IMG/VR virus record: IMGVR_UViG_3300027541_000009
Span: 1 to 64,000 of that record
Direction: 5' to 3' (one strand)
Length of the DNA stretch: 64,000 nucleotides
Shown: positions 3,487-29,525 of the stretch, one piece after another
Layout of the letters: each line of letters starts with the position of its first letter
Position numbering within the stretch: the first letter of the stretch is position 1
Notes under the pieces: generated by a model
The model's input: only the letters and a program-made list of their open reading frames with translations
The model's database searches: none
What the model was told of the DNA's origin: nothing
Translations under genes and position numbers: made by a program

Positions 3487-3544
3487 GGACACTTTACGAA
3501 CTGGAACACGGGCACTTGAAAACGGATGCCCTTTGTCGTATAAT
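3487..3544 (+). promoter_or_regulatory. early promoter with upstream palindromic box
   Basis: GGACAC-N8-CTGGAAC; TTGAAA-N17-TATAAT. Confidence 0.85.
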
Positions 3545-3567
3545 ATTTTCATACACACAGACACCTG

Positions 3568-3756
3568 ATGACTGACGAACAAATCCTTAACCTTGCTGAA
3601 AAGCATCTTGAAGTATTGGTTGATGATTATGAGGGAATAGAGTATTTTTCTTCAACCAAAAAACAAATGGTTGAGTTTGCCCTAAAAATCCACGAAATGG
3701 GTTATAATATGGGAAGAATGGAAGGACTTGAAGTAGGACTGACAAACAATGATTGA
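3568..3756 (+). CDS. hypothetical protein
   Basis: First ORF after promoter. Confidence 0.7.
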   Translation: MTDEQILNLAEKHLEVLVDDYEGIEYFSSTKKQMVEFALKIHEMGYNMGRMEGLEVGLTNND

Positions 3757-4033
3757 AATTGACCCCTCTCTTATTCTCAAATATGATAATCATATTTACT
3801 ATCACGGAGAAAAGTATCAAAAAGTAGAAGAACCCAAAAGTTTTTATGATAAACTCTGGGAAGAACTTGGGAAGAAAGTTGGATATGGTATTGATTGTGA
3901 TGAACTCACTGATAGAGTTATGGATTTGATTAGGAATAATATTCCAGAACCTATGGAAAATAAGTATCACTCTGATGTTCTTCAAGGATATAATACGGCA
4001 CTTAAAGATATAGATTTTAACTTCTATGGATGA
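3749..4033 (+). CDS. hypothetical protein
   Basis: Overlapping ORF. Confidence 0.7.
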   Translation: MIEIDPSLILKYDNHIYYHGEKYQKVEEPKSFYDKLWEELGKKVGYGIDCDELTDRVMDLIRNNIPEPMENKYHSDVLQGYNTALKDIDFNFYG

Positions 4034-4814
4034 TATAATCTTCAAAACCAAAGGCAAAGAAACATTCCGTATTCCTTTTCCAACTCCTGGAACCAAATGT
4101 CCCGAAACTAAACTTGAAGTGAAAGAAATGACTGAATATCAACCAACTCCACAAACACCAGAACAAGTAGATGAAGGTCTGCGTAATGCTTTTAGACAAG
4201 CAATGAAAGATGGTGTGATGGATGCTACTCCTTACCTGAAACAAATGAATTCCAATAAAGAAATTGAACTTCTAAAACAAGAAATCAAAATGCTCAAATC
4301 CAAACTTTCCCTTCTGGAAGAACTGGAAAAAACAAAATCACCAGTAGAAGAAGCATACAAAGAGTGGTGGGGGCAATATCCTGAATTGGAAACTGATTCC
4401 AAGTATGATGATATGAGGTGGCAGGGTTTCCAAGCAGGTTTTCAGGCAGCATATGAAGAGAAGGTAAGAGAAGATGATTATTATAATGAGGTTATTACAC
4501 AAAAAAATACTGAACCACAGTGTCCTGATGAACCAGAGTATTATGATGAAGTAGAATGGGATGAAAAAGATAATCCAAAACCTATGGATGAAGTTGTGAA
4601 TAGATTGGTGAGAAAATACGAAGCACAAAAACTTTTTAATAGATTGGTAGATGAACTTGGTTATGATTTTGATGCTTGTAATGATGTTGTAGATTTGGTA
4701 GAAGATTGGTTGCCGAAAGAACAATCAGCAGCAGGAAGTCAGAATGTAGATACTGAATTACTTGTGGATGGATTTAATCACTGTTTGCAGAAAATGAAGG
4801 AGATGCTACGATGA
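4026..4814 (+). CDS. hypothetical acidic/coiled-coil protein
   Basis: 262-aa ORF with coupled ends. Confidence 0.75.
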   Translation: MDDIIFKTKGKETFRIPFPTPGTKCPETKLEVKEMTEYQPTPQTPEQVDEGLRNAFRQAMKDGVMDATPYLKQMNSNKEIELLKQEIKMLKSKLSLLEELEKTKSPVEEAYKEWWGQYPELETDSKYDDMRWQGFQAGFQAAYEEKVREDDYYNEVITQKNTEPQCPDEPEYYDEVEWDEKDNPKPMDEVVNRLVRKYEAQKLFNRLVDELGYDFDACNDVVDLVEDWLPKEQSAAGSQNVDTELLVDGFNHCLQKMKEMLR

Positions 4815-4993
4815 CTAAACGAAACATAAAACAACAACTCCAGTATTCCTACTATGAGGATATGGAGGATGGTAGAACAATTGAAACGATTGATTATGAT
4901 GCCTTGATTGAAATTATTGATGATTTGTATGATAAAATTGAAACACTTCAAAGAGATAATGAATTTCTAAAATCTTATGCTTGGGAACGATGA
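4811..4993 (+). CDS. hypothetical protein
   Basis: ATGA overlap. Confidence 0.7.
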   Translation: MTKRNIKQQLQYSYYEDMEDGRTIETIDYDALIEIIDDLYDKIETLQRDNEFLKSYAWER

Positions 4994-5172
4994 CTGACGA
5001 ACAAATTGATACAATGCTCCAAATGCATAGGTATCTTATTCATTGTGAGATGAGTTATTTGGTTGATAAAACATTGAACCAAGATGACCGTGCTGCCGAA
5101 CTTCAAGAAAAAGTAAATAACGAAGAATGGACTAAATTTGCTCTATGGTTGAAGAAGATTAGAGATGAATAA
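4990..5172 (+). CDS. hypothetical protein
   Basis: Start moved to ATG 4990 (ATGA overlap). Confidence 0.7.
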   Translation: MTDEQIDTMLQMHRYLIHCEMSYLVDKTLNQDDRAAELQEKVNNEEWTKFALWLKKIRDE

Positions 5173-5977
5173 TGAAATGCCGTGGGTTAATCTCACACAA
5201 GAAGAAGTAGAAGAACTCCGCAGAAAAAAACACGAATTAACGGAATATGGAAAACAGAGGTTGAGAGAACTTATCTACAAACAGGATATGAAAAAAATGG
5301 AAGATGCTGCAAAAGACCTTGTTCTTGAAAATCTTACGCACGAAGAAATGCTTTCTCTTGCTGAACAAAGAGAAGCAGAAAACAAAGCACTTGAAGCATT
5401 AGACAAACTTTATGATGAAAATGGTGAAGGTATGAAACAACTTGCTGAAGATGAAAGAATCAAAGTGATTCAAACCGCTTGTGGTGCGATTGATAAGTAT
5501 TCTGATGCTCTCAAAGCACTTGCTGAAACAGAAAAGGTAGAGTTGCGAGTAGAGTTGGAAGCAAAGAAAAAAGAAAACTTTCAAGAACTTGCTGATGCTT
5601 GTATGAAAGATTATGAACAAAAGTATGGTCGTGATGTATTTCCAGTGGATGAGCATTGGGTGTATATGGTTTCCGAATATTTCGGCACAGGGGAGGGTCA
5701 AACTGTGTGTGTTATGATGACACAGGCAAATCCTGGTCATCCTGAAGATTTTGAAAACTCTACCAATAAGTATGTTGCTTGTACTACACAGCAATATCGT
5801 GCTGTGAGAGCATTCCATGAGCAGTTTGGCACTTGGTATCTTCATGGTCTCAGATTTCTCACTAAAGAAGATTTCTTTAGTGAATATTCATACTACATTC
5901 CTCCAGCAATGATGAAACTTCTCAATAGGAGTTGCTTCAAAGACTTCTACACCCGTGTTCATTACAATTTCTCATAA
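5165..5977 (+). CDS. hypothetical protein, coiled-coil N-terminal half
   Basis: 270-aa ORF. Confidence 0.75.
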   Translation: MNNEMPWVNLTQEEVEELRRKKHELTEYGKQRLRELIYKQDMKKMEDAAKDLVLENLTHEEMLSLAEQREAENKALEALDKLYDENGEGMKQLAEDERIKVIQTACGAIDKYSDALKALAETEKVELRVELEAKKKENFQELADACMKDYEQKYGRDVFPVDEHWVYMVSEYFGTGEGQTVCVMMTQANPGHPEDFENSTNKYVACTTQQYRAVRAFHEQFGTWYLHGLRFLTKEDFFSEYSYYIPPAMMKLLNRSCFKDFYTRVHYNFS

Positions 5978-6273
5978 TGACTTACGACCTAAACCAAGAA
6001 GCAAAACCATTCTCTTACACTCGTGAAGAGTTGTTTGAGTGTATCACAAAGATTATTACTTATCCTCTTGTGATTACTACCGATTCCGAAAGAGCAAAGG
6101 CAGCAGCAATCTTTATGGTTTTCAGTGACTATCTTGGAAACTATACCGAGAGTGATAATAATGGTGGGCATTATGTTTATGAATCTGATGCCACTGACTT
6201 TGAGGGTTATGTGATGGAAAGGTTTGGGTATCTAAACTATGGTGATGCAAGTGCAACGGAGTTGATGCGATGA
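5977..6273 (+). CDS. hypothetical protein
   Basis: TAATG overlap; start at 5977. Confidence 0.7.
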   Translation: MTYDLNQEAKPFSYTREELFECITKIITYPLVITTDSERAKAAAIFMVFSDYLGNYTESDNNGGHYVYESDATDFEGYVMERFGYLNYGDASATELMR

Positions 6274-6455
6274 GTAGATTTCAAGAAAATCCTGATGAGA
6301 TTGTGCTTCAAGACATTCAAATGTTTCATCTTGAAAGTATGAATGAACGCACCCTTTGGATTGGTGTTTATACTGAAGATGACAAAATCTATCACTTAAA
6401 CATTTCTGCTGATGGAGATAAACTACGTTATTATTGGAGCAATGAAACAGTTTAG
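6270..6455 (+). CDS. hypothetical protein
   Basis: ATGA overlap. Confidence 0.7.
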   Translation: MSRFQENPDEIVLQDIQMFHLESMNERTLWIGVYTEDDKIYHLNISADGDKLRYYWSNETV

Positions 6456-6934: not shown

Positions 6935-6972
6935 TATCGATACTCTAACGGGACTATGGAACGTATAGTCAT

Positions 6973-7030
6973 GTGACACTTTTTGTACTGACCCCAACAT
7001 TCCCCGTTGGGGTTCAATCCAGGGTATATT
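6973..7030 (+). promoter_or_regulatory. early promoter of the Ubl/JAB genes
   Basis: GTGACAC-N8-CTGACC box centred 41.5 bp before TATATT. Confidence 0.7.
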
Positions 7031-7090: not shown

Positions 7091-7351
7091 ATGTCTTTCT
7101 TCGATCAAATCCGCACTGCTGATCAATCTGCTCCTGTGACTCTGCTTCTGAATGAAGAAAGCATCACTCTCAATGCAGATCAATTCCGTGGTAAAACTGT
7201 TTCCCAACTGTTCGGAGAGTATGGTCACACTCTTGGGAATGTCTCTCGCATCAACCGTTTTGTTCTCAACGGTGAGGTTGTTCCTGGTGATACCGTAGTG
7301 CGTCCTGGTGAAACTGTGCGGGGTGCAGTTTCTTCCGAAAGCAAAGGTTGA
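7091..7351 (+). CDS. ubiquitin-like (beta-grasp) modifier, PRTRC protein C-like
   Basis: 86 aa; beta-grasp-like pattern (KTVSQLF...FVLNGEVV.GDTVVRPGETV); ends ESKG; first gene of a JAB-E2-E1 cluster. Confidence 0.75.
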   Translation: MSFFDQIRTADQSAPVTLLLNEESITLNADQFRGKTVSQLFGEYGHTLGNVSRINRFVLNGEVVPGDTVVRPGETVRGAVSSESKG

Positions 7352-7426: not shown

Positions 7427-8512
7427 ATGACTGCTGTTACTGAAGAAATTCAAGATCAAACTGTCCAACAACAAGAAACTCCTAGTGTTCTTCGCACTCG
7501 TAGAGATGGTGTGTGGGAAATTTATGATGGTCCTTGGGGTTCTTATCTACGGGTAACTGATGATCCCGAAGCAAATGTAGAAATTACCGAAGATCATCTT
7601 AAAAAGTTTGAACTGAAAAAAGATATTCACCGCATCCCTGCAGAACTTTGGGCACGTTGGGTTAAACTTTGTTTCTATTTTGTAGACAAAGTTCCCAACT
7701 CTGTGGAAGTTTCTATTCGTATTCTTCGCAGTCAGGAAGATCCTAGTCAATATCGTTTTCTCGTTCCTCGTCAGAAAGTCTCTGGTGCTTCTGTGCGAGT
7801 GGAAAACTTTGATGAGGCAGTTGATATTGAGACTGGTGAAGAGATCGAACAGTATCCCCCTTCTGGTTGGATTCCTGTAGGATCTTCTCACTCTCACAAT
7901 ACCATGCAAGCATTCTTCTCAGGTATTGATGACAAATATGAACTTGATGATCCTGGTATTCACCTAGTCATCGGTTCAGTTGACACCAAAAACATGAAGT
8001 ATACTATTGCATCTTCTGTTGTTGGAAGTCGTCGTCGGTTTGAGTTGCCTTATGATAATCTCGTAGATGCAACTCCCGTGGAAGGTGTAAATTTCCATCC
8101 TAAAGTGATTGATTATGTTGATTGGTCAACACCTACTGTAGTTACTCCTAAGAAGTCTGGTGGTTCTTTCCTTAAAGTTCCTACCCAATGGACTAAAAAG
8201 GTATCGGATACTCCCAAAAATAACTTCAACAGTATGGAGTATTGGGGTTGGAATGATTCCGATGATTATAATGATCCTTTTTATTGGAATACTTCTTATT
8301 CTAATAAAGATGATGATATGGGTTTAGATTCAGTTAAGATCTGGCACATTACAGATACACTTAATGATTTTATGAATCAGAATAAAACTGAAGTCCACAA
8401 ACTCAATAATCTTAGGGAAGAACTCTATGACTTTTTGAGTGACTTGGAAGTTCTGTTGGATTCTCAAATCGAACAGAACTTCGAAGAACTTATTGAAAGT
8501 AACGTATATTGA
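7427..8512 (+). CDS. JAB/JAMM metallopeptidase (deubiquitinase-like), PRTRC protein A-like
   Basis: Exact H-x-H-x7-S-x2-D motif (HSHNTMQAFFSGID) with an upstream Glu (SVEVS). Confidence 0.88.
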   Translation: MTAVTEEIQDQTVQQQETPSVLRTRRDGVWEIYDGPWGSYLRVTDDPEANVEITEDHLKKFELKKDIHRIPAELWARWVKLCFYFVDKVPNSVEVSIRILRSQEDPSQYRFLVPRQKVSGASVRVENFDEAVDIETGEEIEQYPPSGWIPVGSSHSHNTMQAFFSGIDDKYELDDPGIHLVIGSVDTKNMKYTIASSVVGSRRRFELPYDNLVDATPVEGVNFHPKVIDYVDWSTPTVVTPKKSGGSFLKVPTQWTKKVSDTPKNNFNSMEYWGWNDSDDYNDPFYWNTSYSNKDDDMGLDSVKIWHITDTLNDFMNQNKTEVHKLNNLREELYDFLSDLEVLLDSQIEQNFEELIESNVY

Positions 8513-8520
8513 TATACCCC

Positions 8521-8578
8521 TGGACAGTTTCCGAACTGTCCAGGATTCCCCCATTTAAAGAGAAATGTCTGCTACACT
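8521..8578 (+). promoter_or_regulatory. early promoter overlapping the 5' end of the E2-like ORF
   Basis: TGGACAG-N8-CTGTCCA palindrome centred 41.5 bp before TGC-TACACT. Confidence 0.65.
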
Positions 8579-9554
8579 ACTGGAACAACCAAGAACGGAA
8601 ATGTCTGTAATTTTTCCAACTAAACCTGCAACTGTGAAACTGCATCCTCTTCCTAAAAATGCAGAGGCAATTACATATCGAGTAGAAGATAATATTATTC
8701 TTTCTGCATGGATGCCTGATGGTTATCATACTGTGCAAGAGCAATATGAAATGACTGATGATGATTTTTACCATGAGAACTGTGAGGGATGTGAACGTAA
8801 TTGTTATTCATTTCTAAATCAGTATACTGATGAAGAAACTGATGAAGTAGATTGGGATCAAGTTCCTGGTGGTTATTATGGACATTGCAATGTTTATGAT
8901 GAAGGTTATTGTGGTCAAGATTGTCCTGAAGGTCATGTAAAAAAAGATTCCAATCTGGAATTTGATATTTCTAACATGGTGTTTGAAATTTCACTCACTC
9001 ATCTTGGAGATTCTGCACGTTTTACTCCAGTTGCTGATAGTGCATATCTTGCCGCAGGTGTTTTTACTAATGATAATGTAAAAAGTACAGAAACTAGGAT
9101 GCCCGCAAATGTTTTCGGTTCCGAAGACAACCCTGAAGGTATTTGCTGGGGATATAATAGCAAACCACATACTCTCAGGGAAATTGTAACTGAATATTAC
9201 AACACTCCATTTAACAATGATCTCACACCCATCGAGTGCTTTGAGGAAAATTGTAGGAGTATTCGATCTATGAAAAATCGTCATGACTTCTGCAGTACAG
9301 ATGATAATTATCTTTGCCAAGGTGCAGATCAACTAATCATGGTAGATGCAGAGAAAAATAAGACTGCATTTTTCCATCTCCTGACTGCAGGATACAAGTC
9401 ACTATCAAAAGCACCCCATATTATGATACTCCCTGTCAAAGAGAGTACTATTCATAAAAATGGAAATGTATTTGAAGGATATTTGACAGATGAAGATTCT
9501 GTGGGAAAGCAGTGGTTTATTACAACTGATGGTCTTTTGATTGGTCAGGTGTGA
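8565..9554 (+). CDS. prokaryotic E2-like protein (Prok-E2_D/PRTRC protein B-like)
   Basis: PANVFGSEDNPEGICWG then YYNTPFNNDL, matching the E2 N-x-G.IC active-site pattern; lies between JAB and E1; alternative start ATG 8601. Confidence 0.7.
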   Translation: MSATLLEQPRTEMSVIFPTKPATVKLHPLPKNAEAITYRVEDNIILSAWMPDGYHTVQEQYEMTDDDFYHENCEGCERNCYSFLNQYTDEETDEVDWDQVPGGYYGHCNVYDEGYCGQDCPEGHVKKDSNLEFDISNMVFEISLTHLGDSARFTPVADSAYLAAGVFTNDNVKSTETRMPANVFGSEDNPEGICWGYNSKPHTLREIVTEYYNTPFNNDLTPIECFEENCRSIRSMKNRHDFCSTDDNYLCQGADQLIMVDAEKNKTAFFHLLTAGYKSLSKAPHIMILPVKESTIHKNGNVFEGYLTDEDSVGKQWFITTDGLLIGQV

Positions 9555-9608
9555 CACTTTTTCAGGTGTCCACTACCCCTTCAAAAGTCCATCCTCACCT
9601 GCTATAAT
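9551..9608 (+). promoter_or_regulatory. early promoter of the E1 gene
   Basis: GTGACAC-N8-GTGTCCAC, 41.5 bp before TGC-TATAAT. Confidence 0.8.
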
Positions 9609-9629: not shown

Positions 9630-10343
9630 ATGAATTTCACTCCCGACAAAACTTTCGTTATTGGTTCTGGTGGAAGTGGTGGTCATCTTATTCCAGCACT
9701 TGCTCGTCTCCTTGCATATCACAAAAATACGCAAGATTCTACTCTAACCGTCATTGATGGGGATGAGTATGAAGAAAAGAATATGACTAGGCAAATTGTT
9801 GCACCTTCTCAGGTGGGATTGAACAAAGCACAAGCAATGAAAGACTTCTGTAATTATCAGGGTCTTGAGAACGTAGATTATAAAGCAGATTTCATTTCTG
9901 CTTCTACGTTTATTCCAATGCTTCGACGTTCAGAAGCACCTATGGTCATTGCATGTGTAGATAATGATGCAACTCGTCTTGCACTTATCAATGCAATCAA
10001 TTCAATGCCTGAAGATAAAGACTTTTTCTTCATCACTCCTGGTAACTCTGATGGAGTTGAAGATGTAAAAGGTCAAACTCTTTGGTATGGTAGAATCGGT
10101 GGAGTTAAAGTTGGTTGTAATCCTGCTCTAGTGTATCCCAACATTGATAATCCTCAAGATAGTATTCCACATCAAGGATCTTGTGCTCTTCATGCACCTT
10201 CTCGTCCTCAACTGATTGCTGCTAATTTTATGGCAGCATCTATTACTCTGATGGTGATTCAAAATCTTTTGGATGGTCAAATTGATCCATCTCAAAGTTC
10301 TATGTTCTTTAATCTTCGTAACCTGAAGACATCTGCTGCATGA
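9630..10343 (+). CDS. ThiF/E1-like ubiquitin-activating enzyme
   Basis: IGSGGSGG, DGDEYEEKNMTRQ, NKA, CVDN..TR, candidate catalytic Cys in QGSCA; no CxxC zinc motifs. Confidence 0.9.
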   Translation: MNFTPDKTFVIGSGGSGGHLIPALARLLAYHKNTQDSTLTVIDGDEYEEKNMTRQIVAPSQVGLNKAQAMKDFCNYQGLENVDYKADFISASTFIPMLRRSEAPMVIACVDNDATRLALINAINSMPEDKDFFFITPGNSDGVEDVKGQTLWYGRIGGVKVGCNPALVYPNIDNPQDSIPHQGSCALHAPSRPQLIAANFMAASITLMVIQNLLDGQIDPSQSSMFFNLRNLKTSAA

Positions 10344-10400
10344 GGACACAAAAGGAACTGGCACAGTGAACCTCCAGTTCCTCCACAGATGCCCTATAAT
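10344..10400 (+). promoter_or_regulatory. early promoter
   Basis: GGACAC-N8-CTGGCAC, 41.5 bp before TATAAT. Confidence 0.8.
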
Positions 10401-11382: not shown

Positions 11383-11441
11383 TGTGCCACTTCTTCAGGT
11401 GGCACAATATGCTTGACAAACCACTCAAAACCTGTTATATT
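11383..11441 (+). promoter_or_regulatory. early promoter upstream of the tRNA cluster
   Basis: TGTGCCAC-N8-GTGGCACA; TTGACA-N17-TATATT. Confidence 0.9.
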
Positions 11442-11618: not shown

Positions 11619-11680
11619 TAACTAACTTTCTAGGAAACTAGATTTTTTAAATACTACACTTCATAGTGTAGTATTATTAT

Positions 11681-11753
11681 GGGCAAGTAGCATAATGGAT
11701 AATGCATCAACCTTCTAAGTTGCCGATTGTAGGTTCGAGTCCTACCTTGCCTG
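11681..11753 (+). tRNA. tRNA-Arg(UCU)
   Basis: GGGCAAG/CTTGCCT acceptor stem, CT-TCT-AA loop, GTAGG-TTCGAGT-CCTAC T arm; no encoded CCA. Confidence 0.92.
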
Positions 11754-11780
11754 TTAGATTCTAATTAGAATCTAAATTAT

Positions 11781-11868
11781 GCGAGTGAGACTTGGTAGTC
11801 AGAGAGGTCTTATAAACCTTTTCCGCCAGATTAGCGGCTTTGAGATGGTTCGAATCCATCCACTCGTA
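11781..11868 (+). tRNA. tRNA with UAU anticodon (Ile) and long variable arm
   Basis: GCGAGTG/CACTCGT acceptor stem, AGGT-CTTATAA-ACCT, CCGC/GCGG variable stem, GATGG-TTCGAAT-CCATC. Confidence 0.8.
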
Positions 11869-11890
11869 TTACTCTAAACTACACTTAGAG

Positions 11891-11898
11891 TATAAATA
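11891..11898 (+). promoter_or_regulatory. T4-type late promoter
   Basis: TATAAATA upstream of HNH gene. Confidence 0.75.
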
Positions 11899-11922
11899 AA
11901 TGTGTAGAGTGATCTAACTCCT

Positions 11923-12339
11923 ATGATAGGAAAATGTAAAAACTGCGAAAAAAACTTTAAGTATTCTCCATCACAAGGAAAAGGAATTTATTGTTCAAAT
12001 AAATGCCAACAAAAAGATTACTACAAACAAAATATTACCGATTGGTTATCCAAAAAAATAACTGGAAAGGTTAGAGATGGAAGACCAAGTGATTTTGTTA
12101 GAAGGTATATGCTTGAAGAAGCAGGATACAAATGTTCTGAATGTGGTTGGGGAAAAGCAAATCCAACAAATGGTATTATCTATCTTGAAATAGACCACAT
12201 AGATGGTTCAAGAAAAAATGGGTATAGGGAAAATCTTAGAGTATTATGTCCCAATTGCCATACCTTAACTAATACCTACAAAACACTAAACAAAAATATA
12301 GGGTATCACAAATCAAGAAAACAACAATTAAATGATTAA
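11923..12339 (+). CDS. HNH homing endonuclease inside the tRNA cluster
   Basis: CSECGW...LEIDHIDG...N..ENLRVLCPNCH; N-terminal CxxC...YCSxxC. Confidence 0.88.
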   Translation: MIGKCKNCEKNFKYSPSQGKGIYCSNKCQQKDYYKQNITDWLSKKITGKVRDGRPSDFVRRYMLEEAGYKCSECGWGKANPTNGIIYLEIDHIDGSRKNGYRENLRVLCPNCHTLTNTYKTLNKNIGYHKSRKQQLND

Positions 12340-12342
12340 CTT

Positions 12343-12415
12343 GCTGGTTTAGCTATCTGGTGAAAGCACCCGACTCATAATCGGTATCAGGTGGGTTCGA
12401 TCCCCTCAACCAGCA
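12343..12415 (+). tRNA. tRNA with CAU anticodon (elongator Met or Ile2)
   Basis: GCTGGTT/AACCAGC acceptor stem, CT-CAT-AA loop, TTCGA T loop; identity not resolvable by eye. Confidence 0.88.
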
Positions 12416-12432
12416 CTTAATTTTTACTTACA

Positions 12433-13904: not shown

Positions 13905-13911
13905 CATTGGT

Positions 13912-13968
13912 GGACACTTCTTCAAGTGTCCATTACACCCAGGATTTGCCCTGGACACCTGCTATAAT
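13912..13968 (+). promoter_or_regulatory. early promoter
   Basis: GGACAC-N8-GTGTCC, 41.5 bp before TATAAT. Confidence 0.85.
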
Positions 13969-14576: not shown

Positions 14577-14950
14577 CTGATTGGAAAGTTAAAGTAGAAA
14601 CTCAAGATCATCAAATTAGAACTGTTACTGTCCAAGACTTTACATACCCTTCAGATGCAAGTCGTGCAGCACTCGCACAAAGTGCAGGAACTAGAGTAAT
14701 AAGTGTTACTCCATCTTATCATGATGAAGATGATCCTCGATATAATTATTATTTCGATCATGATTATCATAAATCGGATGTATCAGATTATTCTACAGAA
14801 ACAAGAACTTACTATGAGGAAACAAAGTTAGATTGGTTTTCTTATTACTTAATTGCAACTTCAATTCCTACTCTAGTTCTATACTTCATCAATCCAGTAT
14901 TTGCTATCATCTTTAATGCTTTATTCTTGTGGTGGTGGTACAAAAAGTGA
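14573..14950 (+). CDS. hypothetical membrane protein
   Basis: Two C-terminal TM-like segments. Confidence 0.7.
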   Translation: MTDWKVKVETQDHQIRTVTVQDFTYPSDASRAALAQSAGTRVISVTPSYHDEDDPRYNYYFDHDYHKSDVSDYSTETRTYYEETKLDWFSYYLIATSIPTLVLYFINPVFAIIFNALFLWWWYKK

Positions 14951-14994
14951 ACTGTCCATATAAACCCACAAAACAAGATCCCACATGCTATAAT
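14938..14994 (+). promoter_or_regulatory. early promoter (degenerate left half-site)
   Basis: Right half CTGTCCA at the standard distance from TGC-TATAAT. Confidence 0.65.
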
Positions 14995-16267: not shown

Positions 16268-16432
16268 ATGCCATTTACTAAGAAATTCCCAAAGTCTGGT
16301 GAAACTAAACACATTCGAGTTCCTGCGGTTTATGCTGACCTAGTGCAAGAGTTAATGGAAGTATTTGATAAGAAATTTGATCCAGAAAGAGGTCAACATT
16401 TTCTTAGAAAATACATCTCAAGTCTTCGATAA
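16268..16432 (+). CDS. small protein, possible ribbon-helix-helix DNA binder (54 aa)
   Basis: Translated by hand: ...ETKHIRVPAVYADLVQELMEVFD... Confidence 0.45.
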   Translation: MPFTKKFPKSGETKHIRVPAVYADLVQELMEVFDKKFDPERGQHFLRKYISSLR

Positions 16433-16444
16433 TCTTTTCTTTAA

Positions 16445-16500
16445 GGACACTTCTAAAACCGTCTGTAATACCTCCAGGGGAGGCAGAAAAGTGCTATAGT
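16445..16500 (+). promoter_or_regulatory. early promoter
   Basis: GGACAC-N8-CCGTC; TGC-TATAGT. Confidence 0.65.
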
Positions 16501-17630: not shown

Positions 17631-18107
17631 ATGGACTACTTACAAATTGAACCGAATCAAACTATTCTAGTATTGAATAGTTCTTATGAACCCCTTAATT
17701 TTACAAATTGGAGACGTGCAGTAGTCCTTCTGTTGAAGAATAAAGCACAAGTATTATCTAATCGTGTTATCAGACTTTTAACTTATGTGAGGATACCTCT
17801 ATCTAAGATAAGAGCAAATCGACCAACTCGTTCACTTGTCTATAAACGTGATGATAATACTTGTCAGTATTGTGGATCTAGAGAAAGACTAACTATAGAT
17901 CATATTATTCCAAAATCTCGTGGTGGAGAAGATACATGGGAAAATTTGGCAACTGCATGTTATTCATGTAACATCAAGAAAGGAAACAAAACACCAGAAG
18001 AAATTGGAATGTTTTTGCTTAAGAAACCAAAAGCACCATTGAGTAAGATGAACCTATCCCTCAATAAATCAAATATCAAAGAGTGGAAAGAGTACATTTA
18101 TGTCTAG
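17631..18107 (+). CDS. HNH endonuclease (McrA-like, common cellular type)
   Basis: VLNSSYEPL...RDDNTCQYCG...TIDHIIPKSRGG..TWENLATACYSCNIKKG. Confidence 0.9.
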   Translation: MDYLQIEPNQTILVLNSSYEPLNFTNWRRAVVLLLKNKAQVLSNRVIRLLTYVRIPLSKIRANRPTRSLVYKRDDNTCQYCGSRERLTIDHIIPKSRGGEDTWENLATACYSCNIKKGNKTPEEIGMFLLKKPKAPLSKMNLSLNKSNIKEWKEYIYV

Positions 18108-18164
18108 TGCCACTTTTTGAACTGTCTATATATCCTTCGGTTGGTCCCGATCCCGTGCTATGAT
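18107..18164 (+). promoter_or_regulatory. early promoter
   Basis: GTGCCAC-N8-CTGTC, 41.5 bp before TGC-TATGAT. Confidence 0.8.
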
Positions 18165-18774: not shown

Positions 18775-18941
18775 TGAATGAAAGACATATTGGATATGAA
18801 ATAGATTGTGATTATCAGTGGGTGAACATGCTCACAACAATGAAAGAAAAGAATCCACAGAGATTCTATGAGTTTTATGATGATAACACCATTTACCATT
18901 ATATGGATAAACTTCAGTATCGTCATTTGACTACTGACTGA
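18774..18941 (+). CDS. hypothetical protein
   Basis: Start moved to ATG 18774. Confidence 0.6.
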   Translation: MNERHIGYEIDCDYQWVNMLTTMKEKNPQRFYEFYDDNTIYHYMDKLQYRHLTTD

Positions 18942-18996
18942 CACTTGTGGAAGTGGCACAGTACATTACCCACTGAGTCCAAATTTACCCTATAAT
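18938..18996 (+). promoter_or_regulatory. early promoter
   Basis: CTGACAC-N8-GTGGCAC, 42.5 bp before TATAAT. Confidence 0.8.
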
Positions 18997-19016: not shown

Positions 19017-19280
19017 ATGACCAACTCAAATCTCTCTAAAATCAAACCCAAACTTCGCACTCAAGGTGTTGTATCAGGGAACTTCGGACGTGCTAAAGTT
19101 AAAGCAGGTTCTCCAATGCGTGATCTTGGTGTCACAAATGCCAAGGTAGTTAAAGTCAACACTCAAGAGGAGTATTTGCATCGTCTATATCGTGCTTATG
19201 CAGCAGCAGATGATGTAAAATTGAAGAAGTTTATTTTTGATGAGATCAAAAAGATTCTGATTCAAAGGGGAGAATGGTAA
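19017..19280 (+). CDS. basic hypothetical protein
   Basis: ORF after promoter. Confidence 0.75.
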   Translation: MTNSNLSKIKPKLRTQGVVSGNFGRAKVKAGSPMRDLGVTNAKVVKVNTQEEYLHRLYRAYAAADDVKLKKFIFDEIKKILIQRGEW

Positions 19281-19832: not shown

Positions 19833-19891
19833 TGTGCCACTTGTAGAACTGGCACAGTAAAATCCCATACCCTCAGTTTCTGTGCTATGAT
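19833..19891 (+). promoter_or_regulatory. early promoter
   Basis: TGTGCCAC-N8-CTGGCACA, 41.5 bp before TATGAT. Confidence 0.85.
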
Positions 19892-20906: not shown

Positions 20907-20966
20907 TGTGCCACTTGTACAAGTGGCACTGATGCTATTGTGGTGCCTAAGATTCTAGGGTATTAT
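20907..20966 (+). promoter_or_regulatory. early promoter
   Basis: Perfect palindrome GTGCCACTTGTACAAGTGGCAC; TATTAT. Confidence 0.8.
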
Positions 20967-20989: not shown

Positions 20990-21154
20990 ATGACTTACAT
21001 CCCGCATCTGTCATACATTCCATATTTGAAGGTGCCTGAAAATCGGGTGCGTCTTGCATTTGATTGGTATAATAGGAATGTAAACCATCCGATGAACTTT
21101 CCGTGCTATGCTTACTGGATTCAGGAGTGTGAAAATGATGGAACCGACTACTAA
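20990..21154 (+). CDS. hypothetical protein (54 aa)
   Basis: GAGGA SD; translated by hand. Confidence 0.6.
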   Translation: MTYIPHLSYIPYLKVPENRVRLAFDWYNRNVNHPMNFPCYAYWIQECENDGTDY

Positions 21155-22040: not shown

Positions 22041-22106
22041 ATTCAATGTGCCACTACTTTTAGTGGCACATTGAATCTCCCAAGCACACGTTTGGTGTGC
22101 TATGAT
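22041..22106 (+). promoter_or_regulatory. early promoter with extended palindrome
   Basis: ATTCAATGTGCCAC-N8-GTGGCACATTGAAT; TGC-TATGAT. Confidence 0.85.
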
Positions 22107-23804: not shown

Positions 23805-23862
23805 TGTGCCACTTGTACTGGTGGCACAGTAAATGAGCACGGTGCCCAAAATGTGGTATTGT
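23805..23862 (+). promoter_or_regulatory. early promoter
   Basis: TGTGCCAC-N8-GTGGCACA; TGG-TATTGT. Confidence 0.8.
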
Positions 23863-23925
23863 ATAGGGGTGGTGAGGGAAGGGCAACCAACCCACCCCAC
23901 AAACGTCAAACTAACTCAAACTAAA

Positions 23926-24078
23926 ATGACTGTTGATTTCTCGAAAGATGTTATGCTCGGTATGCTCCGCAAGGGTGCTACTGGCAATCAGATTCTGGAC
24001 ATCCTGAATGTGATTGTGAGTGATAAAGATGCAGACATTGAGGGTGGTTATGCTGCTTTGAGTGACGACGACATCTGA
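23926..24078 (+). CDS. small protein, MLGMLRKG family (50 aa)
   Basis: Start moved to ATG 23926; paralog at 29578. Confidence 0.75.
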   Translation: MTVDFSKDVMLGMLRKGATGNQILDILNVIVSDKDADIEGGYAALSDDDI

Positions 24079-24172: not shown

Positions 24173-24358
24173 ATGTTTGTTGCTTGCCCTGTTACTTTCA
24201 CTCTTGAAGATGCAGAGTGGTTTGATGACATTGATGAAGCAAAAGAAGATGCACTTGATTGGAGTGTAGAACTCTCTGGTGAGAATGTGATTGTTTATGA
24301 AGCAATCGAAGGCAATTATGGTTACGACTTCAAACCTGTAAGTTCTATCTGTGCCTGA
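24173..24358 (+). CDS. acidic hypothetical protein
   Basis: Start moved to ATG 24173. Confidence 0.65.
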   Translation: MFVACPVTFTLEDAEWFDDIDEAKEDALDWSVELSGENVIVYEAIEGNYGYDFKPVSSICA

Positions 24359-24360
24359 TC

Positions 24361-24416
24361 GACAGTGCTACAACTGTCCACTTTCATCCTAATCGGCACC
24401 TGTGGGGTGCTACAAT
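24361..24416 (+). promoter_or_regulatory. early promoter
   Basis: GACAG-N8-CTGTC, 41.5 bp before TGC-TACAAT. Confidence 0.75.
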
Positions 24417-24440: not shown

Positions 24441-24662
24441 ATGAATCAAACTCAAATTGTTGATGCCATCCTTGATGCACTGAATAATCTCTATAATTGG
24501 GATGTAAATTGCTTTCACTATTGGATTGAAGAACTGTATGATGGTGATGATGAGATTTGGAATAACTGGACTCTAGATAATCTTGCTCGTATTGAGAAGG
24601 ATGTAATGTATTCTTTCGGTGATTTGATGGATCAGGGTCGTGCCGAACTGATTGGCAAATGA
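24441..24662 (+). CDS. acidic hypothetical protein
   Basis: AAGGA SD before ATG 24441. Confidence 0.7.
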   Translation: MNQTQIVDAILDALNNLYNWDVNCFHYWIEELYDGDDEIWNNWTLDNLARIEKDVMYSFGDLMDQGRAELIGK

Positions 24663-24920: not shown

Positions 24921-24982
24921 TGTGTGACACATGTTTTAGTGGCACACTACACTCCCCAAACCCCCTCTAGACCTGCTATACT
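24921..24982 (+). promoter_or_regulatory. early promoter
   Basis: TGTGTGACAC-N8-GTGGCACA; TGC-TATACT. Confidence 0.8.
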
Positions 24983-26404: not shown

Positions 26405-26463
26405 TGTGCCACTTGTTTTAGTGGCACAATAAATGAGCACAGACCCCTCTGGGGTGCTATAGT
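26405..26463 (+). promoter_or_regulatory. early promoter
   Basis: TGTGCCAC-N8-GTGGCACA, 41.5 bp before TATAGT. Confidence 0.85.
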
Positions 26464-26487: not shown

Positions 26488-27066
26488 ATGACCACTTTCA
26501 CCATCAATAAAAAGGGTCAAGAAATCTCTTTTGAGAGCAAGTTTAATACTTTGGAAGATGTAAAGTCTTATCTTGCTGAAAATGTCAAATATAATGATTT
26601 TGTCGATAGTTTATTATCCAAGAAAAGTGTATCTGTATCGCAAGTTTCTTGGATGCACTATCTCGCAACTCAAAGTGTGATTGATTCTGAAACTCCAGTT
26701 GAGTTTGGACCTTACAAGCAACTGGTCAACAAAATGTATGATGCAGGTGCTTATCGTGCCAGCAAGTTTCAAGTGAGACTGCCTGGAATTACTCTGAGCA
26801 CTGTAACTAAAGGTGCCAACATTGGTTGTATTTATCTCTTTGAAAACAACTATTATGTTGGTAAGATTACTGCTACTGGTGAACTGAAAGGTAATGTCAG
26901 TGATGATGTAAAGAATTTGCTAGAAGATGCCAATGATAATCTTCTGCAACTGGCAAAGATTTATGGACATGAGACTGGTTCTTGTTCAATTTGTGGTCGC
27001 ACACTAAATGATCCACTCTCTATTCAAATGGGAATTGGTCCTATTTGTGCAAAACGTTTCTCCTGA
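26488..27066 (+). CDS. protein with C-terminal DUF6011-like zinc ribbon
   Basis: CSICGRTLNDPLSIQMGIGPIC. Confidence 0.75.
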   Translation: MTTFTINKKGQEISFESKFNTLEDVKSYLAENVKYNDFVDSLLSKKSVSVSQVSWMHYLATQSVIDSETPVEFGPYKQLVNKMYDAGAYRASKFQVRLPGITLSTVTKGANIGCIYLFENNYYVGKITATGELKGNVSDDVKNLLEDANDNLLQLAKIYGHETGSCSICGRTLNDPLSIQMGIGPICAKRFS

Positions 27067-27610: not shown

Positions 27611-27625
27611 GAACGGAGTTCAGAG

Positions 27626-27862: not shown

Positions 27863-27896
27863 GGTATCATCCACTCACCTGAGTCCAATGATACAA

Positions 27897-27956
27897 TGTG
27901 CCACCTGTAGCACTGGCACAATACACCCCCCAAACCCCTGCTGGGGATGCTATGAT
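27897..27956 (+). promoter_or_regulatory. early promoter
   Basis: TGTGCCAC-N8-CTGGCACA; TGC-TATGAT. Confidence 0.85.
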
Positions 27957-27980
27957 TACGAAGTAATCAAGGATGACCTG

Positions 27981-28154
27981 ATGACTGCTGCACAACGGAT
28001 GGAAAAGCAATTCTTTTGCAATTTCATTTCTCTTATCAATGAGGTGCAAGGTAAGCAGAAACTTCCTTCTCAACTGAAAGGAAATCGTAAATCTGCTTGG
28101 TGCAAACAAAGCAAAAATCCCAAGCAAAAGAAAGATGCACTCTCCCGAGTTTGA
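27981..28154 (+). CDS. basic hypothetical protein
   Basis: Start moved to ATG 27981 (after promoter, AAGGA SD). Confidence 0.7.
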   Translation: MTAAQRMEKQFFCNFISLINEVQGKQKLPSQLKGNRKSAWCKQSKNPKQKKDALSRV

Positions 28155-28161
28155 TTTCAAA

Positions 28162-28338: not shown

Positions 28339-28793
28339 ATCCCATCTGTCCCACATAAACAACAAAAACTCATGATTCTTCGATTTACGCAAGACATTCA
28401 GACCAAACAAACTGTTTATGTTGTGTGTGATAATGATGGAACACCCAAAACATTAACAACTGATATTACAAAAGCAATTCAATTGACACAATCAAAATGA
28501 CAATAATTGCATTGATTGGATTGATTGTTTTACTCATCATTGGTTATTCACTTTTATCCATTTAATGATTACATTTGCCTGGATACTTCTTATAGGAAAG
28601 ACTCTTACAGCAATCTGGGCATTAAGTTTAGTATGGAAAGAGTATCAAAATTACAAAAAGAAAAAGGCACATTATGACTGAAGAAACACTGAATCTCTTT
28701 ATTGAACAAGAAGAGAAAAGACAATATATTGAAGAAGCAGAAAAGTTGAATATCACTGTTGAATACTACATTCTTGAGTTTCTAAACTGACTT

Positions 28794-29048
28794 ATGACAT
28801 ACAAACAATTCCTTGATCTAGCAACACAATATCATCAACAATATCCAGAGATGAGGAAAGGTCAAGCATTTATGAATTGTCTTTATCAAGTCAATCCATA
28901 CTTGCATGATTTAATCTCCACTACTGAGTTTGATTGTTTTTATGATAACTCACGTTATTGGAACTTTCTTCAAATCGTAGAAAAAAACATTACTGATCAA
29001 GTAGAAAACAAACGTTTTAACTTACCAAAAGTAATTAAATTGTATTGA
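28794..29048 (+). CDS. hypothetical phage protein (RxGQA motif)
   Basis: EMRKGQAFMNCL...DCFYD. Confidence 0.65.
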   Translation: MTYKQFLDLATQYHQQYPEMRKGQAFMNCLYQVNPYLHDLISTTEFDCFYDNSRYWNFLQIVEKNITDQVENKRFNLPKVIKLY

Positions 29049-29148
29049 TTATTACTTGTTTAAAAATGTATTAAAAAATATATTGTTGTGTTTATATTAG
29101 TCTGATAAGATGTTGTATAAATACTCTGTTTTATTTGCCTCTGTACTG

Positions 29149-29202
29149 CCTTATAGACTCTATCTATTCCCTTATAGACTCTATCTATTCCCTTATAGAC
29201 TC
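29149..29202. repeat. 21-bp tandem repeat (about 2.6 copies)
   Basis: CCTTATAGACTCTATCTATTC at 29149 and 29170, partial at 29191. Confidence 0.95.
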
Positions 29203-29254
29203 TTATGAGTACCTCAATTAAATGGTGATATTTATAGTCATCTAAGGCTGCATA

Positions 29255-29283
29255 AGTATAGCACACCTCTAAAAATCTGTCAA
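29255..29283 (-). promoter_or_regulatory. minus-strand sigma70 promoter
   Basis: Reverse complement reads TTGACA-N17-TATACT with TGC extension. Confidence 0.8.
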
Positions 29284-29316
29284 CCCCCCACAAAAACTCT
29301 AAGAACCCAGCAAAAG

Positions 29317-29434
29317 TTTTCCACAGGTTTCGGAGTAAACTCAGTGTTTGCAATGCTTTATAAGAATTGCCCTGTGGAAAACTTTATAAAATCTGTGGAA
29401 AAACCTGTGGAAAACTATGTCAACCTGTGGAAAA
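29317..29434. repeat. cluster of five TTTTCCACA (cyanobacterial DnaA-box consensus) 9-mers
   Basis: TTTTCCACA at 29317; TGTGGAAAA at 29373, 29394, 29406, 29426. Confidence 0.85.
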
Positions 29435-29467
29435 CTATTAGAATCTCAGCATGAGTCTCTGATGTGG

Positions 29468-29525
29468 TGTGCCACTTGTGAAACTGGCACAGTAAATGAG
29501 CACAGACCCCGATCTGTGGTATTAT
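29468..29525 (+). promoter_or_regulatory. early promoter
   Basis: TGTGCCAC-N8-CTGGCACA; TGG-TATTAT. Confidence 0.8.

What the first reader, a model, noticed from the sequence alone, without database searches (positions are those of the whole stretch)
3487..29525. About 20 early promoters share a spaced palindromic box at a fixed helical position
Seen: consensus approximately (T)G(T/G)G(C/A)CAC-N8-(G/C)TG(G/T)C(A/C). Copies start at 3487, 6973, 8521, 9551, 10344, 11383, 13912, 14938, 16445, 18107, 18938, 19833, 20907, 22047, 23805, 24361, 24921, 26405, 27897 and 29468. In every case the centre lies 40.5-42.5 bp before the first T of the -10 hexamer (about -53 from the TSS). Most lack a good -35 but have an extended TGn -10. 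Inference: the site of a dimeric activator (phage- or host-encoded) defining the early regulon, functionally like the T4 MotA box but palindromic. Upstream motifs at cyanomyovirus early promoters have, as I recall, been reported, so novelty is uncertain; the binding factor is the open question.
Basis: partly seen in the sequence, partly recalled or inferred. Interest (0 to 1): 0.7.

Follow-up and report, generated by a model that had tools for sequence, protein, structure and literature searches.

The report
Conserved cyanophage early-promoter box
A 24-bp palindromic box sits at one fixed distance upstream of about 20 promoters for small genes in this T4-like cyanophage; it is real, it occurs in all seven named T4-like cyanophages scanned, and the protein that reads it is still unknown.

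Summary
All 20 sites exist. The consensus is TGTG(C/A)CA(C/G)-TT-N4-AA-(G/C)TG(G/T)CACA, and each box centre lies 40.5-42.5 bp before a TAnnnT -10 element. The core pattern matches 16 times in the window against 0.22 expected.

Each box opens a promoter cassette of about 60 bp. The cassette runs from the stop codon of one small gene to the next gene. It consists of the box, a 28-30 bp variable spacer that often holds a hairpin, and a -10 that is usually the extended TGn type. There is no -35 above background.

The same cassette, with the same spacing, occurs in 645 distinct boxes from more than 100 viral contigs. It also occurs in Syn9, S-T4, S-PM2, S-SSM7, P-SSM2, P-SSM4 and P-HM2, clustered in each phage's small-ORF region.

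The two half-sites vary independently. 22% of boxes cannot form a hairpin and no T-run follows the box. It therefore behaves as a protein operator at about -65 to -42, not as a terminator.

156 picocyanobacterial genomes show no enrichment, so a phage-encoded factor is more likely than a host regulator. No candidate was found.

It is a new member of a known kind: a PeSL-like early cassette, and probably the Syn9 early element. It is not MotA-like.

The parts
3485..3544 (+). Cassette 1: degenerate box 3485-3508, spacer hairpin followed by a T-run, -10 TATAAT at 3539; next ORF at 3568
   Evidence: The box cannot fold (dG 0); the spacer hairpin is -9.0 kcal/mol. A paralogous cassette lies at 211528 in the same record.
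6972..7030 (+). Cassette 2: box 6972-6995, -10 TATATT at 7025; next ORF at 7091
   Evidence: Box dG 0; spacer hairpin -6.8.
8520..8578 (+). Cassette 3: box 8520-8543 (GGACAG/CTGTCC type), -10 tgcTACACT at 8573; next ORF at 8601
9550..9608 (+). Cassette 4: box 9550-9573, which overlaps the stop codon of ORF 8565-9554; -10 tgcTATAAT at 9603; next ORF at 9630 (ThiF-like)
10342..10400 (+). Cassette 5: box 10342-10365, -10 TATAAT at 10395; next ORF at 10423
   Evidence: Box dG 0.
11383..11441 (+). Cassette 6: perfect box 11383-11406; the only copy with a consensus TTGACA -35; -10 tgtTATATT at 11436
13910..13968 (+). Cassette 7: box 13910-13933, -10 tgcTATAAT at 13963; next ORF at 13997
14936..14994 (+). 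Cassette 8: weak box 14936-14959, -10 tgcTATAAT at 14989; next ORF at 15009 is a helicase. Syn9 has the same pairing: box centre 49089, then helicase gp75.
16443..16500 (+). Cassette 9: weak box 16443-16466, -10 tgcTATAGT at 16495
18106..18164 (+). Cassette 10: box 18106-18129, directly after the HNH endonuclease ORF 17631-18107; -10 tgcTATGAT at 18159; next ORF at 18188
18937..18996 (+). Cassette 11: box 18937-18960, -10 TATAAT at 18991; next ORF at 19017 (basic, 87 aa)
19833..19891 (+). Cassette 12: box 19833-19856, -10 tgcTATGAT at 19886
20907..20966 (+). Cassette 13: box 20907-20930 (22 of its 24 bp form a perfect palindrome), -10 TATTAT at 20961; next ORF at 20990
22047..22106 (+). Cassette 14: perfect box 22047-22070, spacer hairpin, -10 tgcTATGAT at 22101; next ORF at 22139
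23805..23862 (+). Cassette 15: perfect box 23805-23828, spacer of the 'gtaaatgagcac' type, -10 tggTATTGT at 23857
   Evidence: RNA contig depth rises 2-4 fold here.
24358..24416 (+). Cassette 16: box 24358-24381 (GACAG/CTGTC type), -10 tgcTACAAT at 24411; next ORF at 24441
24923..24982 (+). Cassette 17: box 24923-24946, -10 tgcTATACT at 24977; next ORF at 25005 (DUF2786/DUF7168)
   Evidence: A variant DNA contig is joined inside this box.
26405..26463 (+). Cassette 18: perfect box 26405-26428, spacer hairpin, -10 tgcTATAGT at 26458; next ORF at 26488
   Evidence: The box plus its flank is 97% identical to an unannotated stretch of Synechococcus phage S-T4.
27897..27956 (+). Cassette 19: box 27897-27920, -10 tgcTATGAT at 27951; next ORF at 27981
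   Evidence: A variant DNA contig is joined inside this box.
29468..29525 (+). Cassette 20: box 29468-29491, -10 tggTATTAT at 29520
   Evidence: In RNA run X15 a high-depth contig starts at 29549, roughly 15-17 nt past the predicted start site; the previous contig ends at 29371.

Best explanation
Each site is the upstream element of a compact promoter cassette that separates small genes in the hyperplastic region just upstream of the baseplate genes. This region is probably the early region. The cassette has three parts. First comes a 24-bp palindromic box that begins at or within about 20 nt of the previous stop codon. Next comes a 28-30 bp spacer of free sequence that often folds into a hairpin, sometimes with a T-run. 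Last comes a -10 element, usually of the extended TGn type, with no -35. The box would occupy about -65 to -42 (centre about -53.5), which is where RNA polymerase alpha-CTD normally touches DNA. I take the box to be the operator of a sequence-specific, two-fold symmetric DNA-binding protein that acts on RNA polymerase from that fixed position. The box is found in every T4-like cyanophage examined and is not enriched in picocyanobacterial genomes. The factor is therefore more likely encoded by the phage lineage than by the host. It could be delivered with the virion to switch the early promoters on, or made early to switch them off. Shown: the motif, its spacing, its distribution, the independence of its half-sites, and its absence from hosts. 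Inferred: protein binding, early timing, the direction of the effect and the origin of the factor.
For: Motif and spacing. 20 of 20 sites are verified, with the centre 40.5-42.5 bp from the -10. There are 16 exact core matches against 0.22 expected.

An unselected histogram over 645 distinct boxes from more than 100 viral contigs shows TAnnnT starting at 40.5, 41.5 and 42.5 in 145, 348 and 205 cases, against roughly 20 per other offset. TGnTAnnnT gives 97, 187 and 77 against about 1-2. Information content is high across the box and the -10 and near zero in the spacer. The spacing is therefore conserved without the spacer sequence being conserved.

Protein site rather than hairpin. Watson-Crick frequency at mirrored positions equals the value expected if the halves were independent: 0.61 against 0.61, 0.86 against 0.86, 0.62 against 0.61. 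The largest excess is 0.62 against 0.52 at -8/+7. Pairing left and right halves from different sites changes mean dG only from -7.9 to between -7.0 and -7.4. 22% of boxes have no useful hairpin, the same as the control. No T-run follows the box. In this genome 5 of 26 boxes have dG 0 yet keep the core bases and the spacing.

Lineage-wide distribution. Cassettes with the -10 at 41.5 cluster in Syn9 (44.8-53.0 kb, the gp55-gp93 small-ORF region upstream of gp25/gp6), P-SSM2 (44.6-68.8 kb), P-HM2 (35.7-39.8 kb), S-PM2 (2-23 kb) and P-SSM4 (39.7-51.4 kb). In S-SSM7 the core pattern clusters at 43.0-51.8 kb, but the -10 spacing was not measured there. The box-to-helicase pairing is conserved between this phage and Syn9.

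Hosts. Five Synechococcus/Cyanobium genomes have fewer matches than the reversed control. In 151 further genomes of the same family, about 26 matches at up to 1 mismatch compare with about 27 for the control. The multi-hit cases, on short contigs with AT-rich phage-like spacers (two shared by two genomes), look like phage DNA in host bins; their downstream promoters were not checked.

Transcription. Six metatranscriptome runs hold 70-96% of the sampled words of window 19.0-25.0 kb. In the four that were laid on the window, RNA contig depth is uneven, 3-54x across 24.0-29.9 kb in X15 and X17, and it steps up at the 23.8-kb and 29.5-kb cassettes. DNA depth is roughly flat, 39-59x and 28-47x.
Against: No binding protein was identified. 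The record has no HTH_3, Ogr/Delta or AsiA match, and no above-threshold Crp-type HTH or MotA match. None of the 19 small or unassigned ORFs checked among the 71 shared with five reference cyanophages has a recognisable transcription-factor domain.

The most conserved trinucleotides of the two halves are 14-15 bp apart, about 1.4 helical turns. This is unusual for a simple helix-turn-helix dimer.

A phage-encoded factor cannot be made before the first transcripts. An activator role therefore needs delivery with the virion, for which there is no evidence here.

No transcription start sites were mapped. The RNA runs are held only as contigs.

36% of boxes form hairpins of -10 kcal/mol or better, slightly more than the 27% in the half-swap control. 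A secondary RNA-level role is therefore not excluded.
Confidence: 0.6

Rival explanations
1. The box is the stem-loop of a PeSL-type cassette. Once transcribed, it folds into a hairpin that terminates, attenuates or stabilises the upstream transcript. Its fixed position would then only reflect cassettes being copied as units.
For: PeSLs of T4-like phages pair an early promoter with a stem-loop, which in some phages lies just upstream of the promoter. Perfect boxes fold at -14 to -15 kcal/mol. 36% of 454 boxes reach -10 or better, against 27% in the half-swap control. The boxes lie right after stop codons.
Against: There is no compensatory covariation. 22% of boxes cannot fold, the same as in controls. 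No T-run follows the box. About a third of cassettes carry a separate, better hairpin between the box and the -10, several with T-runs, and that hairpin fits the PeSL stem-loop role better. Spacing to the -10 is held to within 1 bp although spacer sequences are unrelated, which a terminator does not need.
Confidence: 0.12
2. The box is mainly a recombination substrate. It is a conserved sequence kept uniform by gene conversion, and it lets gene cassettes be swapped, deleted or inserted between related cyanophages (PeSL-style modular shuffling). It has little direct role in transcription.
For: PeSLs were shown to mediate such shuffling. In DNA run X1 a minor contig (depth 8.7 against about 40) joins 27901 back to 24928, inside the left halves of two boxes. 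Other small contigs share only the box with this genome. The boxes lie in the most variable, ORFan-rich region. The record holds two divergent copies of that region.
Against: Recombination alone does not explain why each half-site is conserved base by base across phages whose proteins are only 40-60% identical. It also does not explain the exact distance to the -10. Shuffling is probably a consequence of the repeats, not the reason they are conserved. The two roles are not exclusive.
Confidence: 0.13
3. The box is read by a host transcription factor that is conserved across marine Synechococcus and Prochlorococcus. The phage borrows this factor to fire its first promoters before any phage protein exists.
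For: Early promoters must work with what is in the cell at injection. The cassette is shared by phages of both host genera. NtcA-activated cyanobacterial promoters likewise combine a palindrome, a -10 and no -35 (established knowledge; NtcA sites in cyanophages are discussed in PMC3037559).
Against: 156 picocyanobacterial genomes show no enrichment, and their multi-hit contigs look like phage DNA. The box is not the NtcA site (GTA-N8-TAC, centred at -41.5), nor the CRP, LexA or CIRCE pattern as I recall them.
Confidence: 0.13
4. The promoter-proximal half (C/G)TGGCAC is a sigma-54 type -24 element.
For: TGGCAC matches the -24 consensus, as I recall it.
Against: There is no conserved GC element 10 bp downstream; information content is about 0.02-0.35 bits across the spacer. 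The distal half is equally conserved, in mirror image. A -10 element lies at a fixed distance. Cyanobacteria lack rpoN (established knowledge).
Confidence: 0.01

Closest known systems
PeSL (promoter-early stem-loop) cassettes of T4-like phages (Arbiol et al. 2010, PMC2839356; Comeau et al. 2014, PMC4122927)
   Same: Both are short repeated intergenic cassettes that hold an early-type promoter. Both are concentrated in hyperplastic regions directly upstream of small ORFans. Both often include a hairpin and are associated with rearrangement breakpoints.
   Different: PeSLs were described for coliphage, Yersinia-phage and vibriophage groups, not for cyanophages. They have good -35 and -10 boxes and an AT-rich upstream region. 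Their stem-loops are conserved as structures, with variable position. Here there is no -35. A GC-rich, sequence-conserved palindrome takes the place of the AT-rich region at an exact distance, and it is not conserved as a structure.
Early-gene regulatory element of cyanophage Syn9 (Doron et al. 2016, ISME J 10:1437; recalled from memory, paper not held)
   Same: The same box-plus-(-10) cassette precedes genes gp61, gp68, gp73, gp75, gp78 and gp90 in the Syn9 small-ORF region. That region is syntenic with window 3-30 kb.
   Different: I could not read the paper. Identity with the published motif, and the early timing, are inferred and not checked.
P2 Ogr / P4 Delta activator sites at P2 late promoters (recalled from memory)
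   Same: Both are a dyad-symmetric element centred about 55 bp upstream of the start site of promoters that lack a -35. Both are thought to work through the RNA polymerase alpha subunit.
   Different: The P2 dyad is TGT-N12-ACA; here the outer triplets are TGT-N18-ACA. No Ogr/Delta zinc-finger gene is present. P2 uses the site for late genes, not early ones.
NtcA-activated cyanobacterial promoters
   Same: Both have a palindrome with an 8-bp centre, a TAnnnT -10 and no -35.
   Different: The NtcA site is GTA-N8-TAC centred at -41.5 (PMC3037559, and established knowledge). This box is CAC-N8-GTG within a 24-bp palindrome, sits 12 bp further upstream and is absent from host genomes.
T4 MotA box of middle promoters
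   Same: Both are a phage-specific upstream element that stands in for a missing -35.
   Different: The MotA box is asymmetric, is centred near -30 and needs MotA and AsiA. Neither gene is present, and cyanomyoviruses in general lack them (PMC2984593).

Membership tests
PeSL cassette (T4-like phages) | Sigma-70-type early promoter inside the repeat | tested here: inconclusive
   A -10 is present in 26 of 26 cassettes of this record, of the TGn-extended type in 15 of the 20 window cassettes. The -35 is no better than background, 2.9 against 2.6 matches of 6.
PeSL cassette (T4-like phages) | Stem-loop that can act as a terminator or attenuator | tested here: inconclusive
   The box itself shows no covariation, 22% of boxes are unfoldable and no T-run follows. 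A separate spacer hairpin is enriched: mean dG -6.0 against -3.4 when shuffled, and 34% against 12% reach -7 or better. Terminator function was not tested.
PeSL cassette (T4-like phages) | Concentrated in hyperplastic regions upstream of ORFans | tested here: met
   All 20 lie between 3.4 and 29.6 kb among small ORFs. Of the ORFs sent to Pfam or PHROGs, most matched no family of known function. The region lies directly upstream of gp25/gp6.
PeSL cassette (T4-like phages) | Recombination between cassettes (indels, replacements, mini-circles) | tested here: inconclusive
   One minor DNA contig is joined inside two boxes (27901 to 24928). Other contigs share only the box. These are assembled contigs, not reads.
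Cyanomyovirus (Syn9-type) early regulatory element | Same motif upstream of Syn9 early genes | not testable with these tools
   The cassette is present in Syn9 at box centres 44785, 47215, 48569, 49089, 51011 and 53007. The paper that defines the element and the early class is not held.
Cyanomyovirus (Syn9-type) early regulatory element | Transcripts start downstream of the cassette early in infection | not testable with these tools
   Only metatranscriptome contigs are available. Their depth steps are consistent with promoters but give no 5' ends and no timing.
T4 MotA-dependent middle promoter | Asymmetric MotA box centred near -30 in place of the -35 | tested here: not met
   The box is palindromic and centred 41.5 bp upstream of the -10, at about -53.5.
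T4 MotA-dependent middle promoter | motA and asiA genes | tested here: not met
   MotCF gives only a sub-threshold hit inside the UvsW-like ORF. AsiA gives none.
NtcA / CRP-family class II promoter | GTA-N8-TAC (or TGTGA-N6-TCACA) centred at -41.5, with sites in the host regulon | tested here: not met
   The sequence and the position differ. There is no enrichment in 156 host-family genomes.
P2 Ogr/Delta-type activation | Dyad near -55 at promoters without a -35 | tested here: met
   The centre is at about -53.5 and there is no -35. The start site is predicted, not mapped.
P2 Ogr/Delta-type activation | TGT-N12-ACA dyad and an Ogr_Delta zinc-finger activator gene | tested here: not met
   The outer triplets are TGT-N18-ACA. 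PF04606 has no match in the record.

The most novel reading that the evidence does not exclude
T4-like cyanophages, which lack Alt, Mod, MotA and AsiA, control their whole early gene class through one lineage-specific DNA-binding protein that has not been recognised. It would read a 24-bp palindrome at -53.5. It would either be injected with the DNA to recruit host RNA polymerase to promoters that lack a -35, or be made early to shut those promoters off. It would belong to a protein family with no detectable similarity to known transcription factors.
Probability: 0.35. Interest if true: 0.7.

Novelty: new member of a known kind. Interest (0 to 1): 0.42.

Why it matters
T4-like cyanophages are among the most abundant viruses in the sea, and it is unresolved how they start and time their gene expression without the T4 toolkit. 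This analysis shows four things about the box. It is one invariant module found in every Synechococcus and Prochlorococcus myovirus scanned. It is constrained in sequence and in spacing but not in RNA structure. It sits where alpha-CTD would bind. It has no counterpart in host genomes. This narrows the open question to one concrete experiment: find the protein that binds this 24-mer. It also gives a simple sequence signature for marking putative early transcription units in uncultured cyanophage contigs, and for spotting phage DNA in host bins.

Tried and rejected
Literature. Doron et al. 2016 could not be opened by DOI or PMC id. Eight full-text searches and several papers gave no explicit description of this box. 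Only the PeSL papers were relevant.

Host regulon. Pattern scans of 5 and then 151 picocyanobacterial genomes showed no enrichment.

Search for the binding protein. I clustered 2,960 ORFs from box-bearing loci. The widely shared families are mostly small acidic proteins.
- A basic 87-aa family (19017-19280) occurs only in the S-TIM5 and S-B05 groups.
- A 54-aa family (16268-16432) has a strand-helix-helix pattern (pLDDT 69). It has no match in the phage collection or in five reference cyanophages by profile search.
- Neither family can be the universal factor.
- Family scans of the whole record found no Ogr_Delta or HTH_3. The one Crp-HTH hit is spurious and lies inside an S-adenosylhomocysteine hydrolase.
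- Of the 71 ORFs shared with five reference phages, Pfam scans of 19 small or unassigned ones gave no transcription-factor domain.

Start-site mapping. The RNA runs are stored as contigs, so no 5' ends were obtained. A loose end seen at 24946 was not listed as a joint, so I do not rely on it.

Sigma-54 reading. Rejected.

Divergent promoters on both sides of one box. 210 of 803 boxes have a TAnnnT on both sides. That is close to my rough estimate of about 25% by chance, which was not computed with a tool.

Complex prediction was not used, because there was no candidate protein to test.

Full report
**What the window is.** The window is the first 64 kb of a 284,050-bp IMG/VR virus record. The record has 33% G+C in the window. 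It encodes T4-type baseplate proteins gp6 and gp8 and psbA and psbD. Its gp6 is 61% identical to that of Synechococcus phages Sf-FS3, S-SCSM2R and S-SSM7. It is therefore an uncultured T4-like cyanomyovirus. Sequencing runs labelled riverine metagenome hold the sequence, both as DNA and in metatranscriptomes.

**The observation.**
- When the sites are registered on CA(C/G)-N8-(G/C)TG, the centre of every site lies 40.5-42.5 bp upstream of the first T of a TAnnnT hexamer.
- The consensus extends to a 24-bp palindrome, TGTG(C/A)CA(C/G)-TT-N4-AA-(G/C)TG(G/T)CACA.
- The core pattern GMCAS-N8-STGKC matches 16 times in the window, all on the + strand, against 0.22 expected from shuffles.
- 15 of the 20 promoters have TGn in front of the -10.
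- The best -35 match (2.9 of 6) is no better than upstream of random TAnnnT hexamers (2.6 of 6).
- A weight-matrix scan of the whole record finds no further promoter-linked copy in the window. It finds six more, with the same spacing and strand, at 202.8-229.9 kb.

**Anatomy of the cassette.**
- Where an upstream ORF of 45 or more codons could be called (22 of 26 cassettes), its stop codon lies from 19 nt before the first base of the box to 14 nt inside it.
- A 28-30 bp spacer follows, then the -10. The next start codon lies about 20-65 nt after the -10.
- Information content is high across the box and the -10 and close to zero in the spacer.
- About a third of spacers fold better than shuffled sequence: mean dG is -6.0 against -3.4, and 34% against 12% reach -7 kcal/mol or better.
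- Several spacer hairpins are followed by a T-run that leads into the -10, for example at 3496, 202817, 211539, 213062 and 229896.
- If the -10 spans -12 to -7, the box spans about -65 to -42.

**Is it a hairpin or a protein site?** I collected 454 distinct, oriented sites from 108 sources.
- At every mirrored pair of positions, the observed Watson-Crick frequency equals the value expected from independent half-sites. The only modest excess is 0.62 against 0.52 at -8/+7, where a third of sites are A·G or C·T.
- Re-pairing left and right halves from different sites barely changes the predicted stability (-7.9 against -7.0 to -7.4 kcal/mol).
- 22% of boxes have no useful hairpin, the same as the control.
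- The 8 nt after the box are T-poor.
- In this record 5 of 26 boxes have dG 0 but keep G-9, C-7, A-6, T+5, G+6, C+8 and the spacing.
- The distance to the -10 is held to within 1 bp even though the spacers are unrelated in sequence. In an unselected histogram over 645 distinct boxes, TAnnnT starts at 40.5, 41.5 and 42.5 in 145, 348 and 205 cases, against about 20 per other offset.

These features fit recognition of double-stranded DNA by a two-fold symmetric protein that must face RNA polymerase. They do not fit selection for RNA pairing. A terminator role fits the spacer hairpins better.

**Distribution.** Most of these have the same downstream promoter. The higher-G+C subgroup is also related to Synechococcus myoviruses. 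Among named phages, similar cassettes occur only in Synechococcus phages, in unannotated DNA. I then scanned complete reference genomes.
- Syn9: six cassettes at 44.8-53.0 kb, in front of gp61, gp68, gp73, gp75 (helicase), gp78 and gp90. This is the small-ORF block just upstream of gp25/gp6.
- P-SSM2: about 15 cassettes at 44.6-68.8 kb.
- P-HM2: cassettes at 35.7-39.8 kb.
- S-PM2: about 15 cassettes at 2-23 kb.
- S-SSM7: ten core-pattern matches at 43.0-51.8 kb; the -10 spacing was not measured there.
- P-SSM4: cassettes at 39.7-51.4 kb.

The window's 3-30 kb block is syntenic with the Syn9 block, including a box in front of a helicase gene. The cassette is thus a lineage-wide feature of T4-like cyanophages of both Synechococcus and Prochlorococcus.

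**Is it early?** I recall that Doron et al. (2016) reported three temporal classes for Syn9 and 'a novel regulatory element' for the early genes. The paper is not in the library. That this box is that element is therefore an inference from position, not something I verified.
- Six metatranscriptome runs hold 70-96% of the sampled words of window 19.0-25.0 kb.
- RNA contig depth varies from 3x to 54x in runs X15 and X17 across 24.0-29.9 kb, while DNA depth stays at 39-59x and 28-47x.
- RNA depth steps up at the 23.8-kb and 29.5-kb cassettes.
- In run X15 a high-depth contig starts at 29549, roughly 15-17 nt beyond the predicted start site; the previous contig ends at 29371.

This is consistent with active promoters but does not map start sites or timing.

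**Who binds it?**
- Five Synechococcus/Cyanobium genomes, reached through psbA loci, have fewer near-matches than the reversed control.
- In 151 genomes of the same family, about 26 matches at up to 1 mismatch compare with about 27 control matches. The multi-hit cases are short contigs whose boxes have AT-rich, phage-like spacers. Two such boxes are shared between two genomes at the same 1.27-kb spacing. This looks like phage DNA in host bins, although their downstream promoters were not checked.
- A host regulon for this site is therefore unlikely, which points to a factor encoded by the phage lineage.
- I did not find that factor. The record has no HTH_3, Ogr/Delta or AsiA match, and no above-threshold Crp-HTH or MotA match.
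- Of the 71 ORFs shared with five reference phages, the 19 small or unassigned ones sent to Pfam gave no transcription-factor domain.
- Two small candidates near boxes are restricted to subsets of phages: a basic 87-aa family and a 54-aa family with a ribbon-helix-helix-like pattern.

**Comparison with known systems.** The nearest described kind is the PeSL cassette of T4-like phages. The two share the early-type promoter, the stem-loop, the location in hyperplastic regions in front of ORFans, and involvement in modular shuffling.
- Shared here: the location, the repetition, an accompanying hairpin, and a hint of recombination. A minor DNA contig joins 27901 to 24928 inside two boxes, and other contigs share only the box.
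- Different here: there is no -35, and a sequence-conserved GC-rich palindrome sits at an exact distance where PeSLs have AT-rich DNA.
- In geometry the box resembles the dyads bound by P2 Ogr near -55 (from memory), but the sequence and the protein family do not match.
- It is not an NtcA, CRP, MotA or sigma-54 element.

**Verdict.** The MotA analogy fails. The direction of regulation and the origin of the factor are open. The element is a new member of a known kind, not a new kind. Its main value is that it makes the unknown regulator of cyanomyovirus early genes directly testable.

Noticed in passing
window 900-64000, compared with 210000-277000 of the same 284-kb record: The record holds two colinear but divergent copies of the small-ORF region plus the baseplate module. 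Identities are 40% for gp25, 49% for gp6, 49% for gp8 and 37% for the helicase. All other T4 core genes are single copy. This is either a large duplication or a chimeric metagenome contig that runs about 1.4 times round the circle into a second phage. G+C and tetranucleotide content do not decide between them.
   Followed up: partly
window 24923-24946 and 27897-27920: In DNA run X1 a minor contig (depth 8.7 against about 40) joins 27901 back to 24928, inside the left halves of two boxes. Small contigs in X7 share only the 24-bp box with this genome. This suggests that co-occurring relatives are rearranged at boxes.
   Followed up: partly
window 16268-16432 (+): A conserved 54-aa protein (10 ORFs, 9 distinct sequences, among the box-bearing loci) has an N-terminal 'HIRVP' strand region and two helices (AF2 pLDDT 69). 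The pattern resembles a ribbon-helix-helix DNA-binding protein. It is encoded just upstream of box 16443. It is absent from five reference cyanophages and from the phage collection.
   Followed up: partly
window 7427-8512 and 9630-10343 (+): A Prok-JAB domain protein and a ThiF (E1-like) protein are encoded two genes apart, each behind its own box cassette. This is an E1/JAB pair in a phage early-type region.
   Followed up: no
window 2662-3486, 11923-12339, 17631-18107 (+); tRNAs at 11680-12416: A homing-endonuclease-like ORF, two HNH endonuclease ORFs and three tRNA genes (Arg-tct, Ile-tat, Met-cat) lie among the cassettes.
   Followed up: no
window 23833-24078 (+): The longest ORF here starts inside the promoter cassette, so its conserved N-terminus is a translation of the conserved spacer and -10. 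Gene callers probably place starts too far upstream at such cassettes, as they also may for Syn9 gp61.
   Followed up: no
G014:C28, G154:C133, G103:C41 and others (host-family genome bins): Several picocyanobacterial assemblies contain short contigs whose boxes have AT-rich, phage-like spacers. Two boxes are shared by two genomes at the same 1.27-kb spacing. They look like cyanophage DNA binned with host genomes; downstream promoters were not checked.
   Followed up: no
record 138619-139872 (+), outside the window: The phage encodes a full-length S-adenosyl-L-homocysteine hydrolase (E 1.7e-65), an auxiliary metabolic gene.
   Followed up: no
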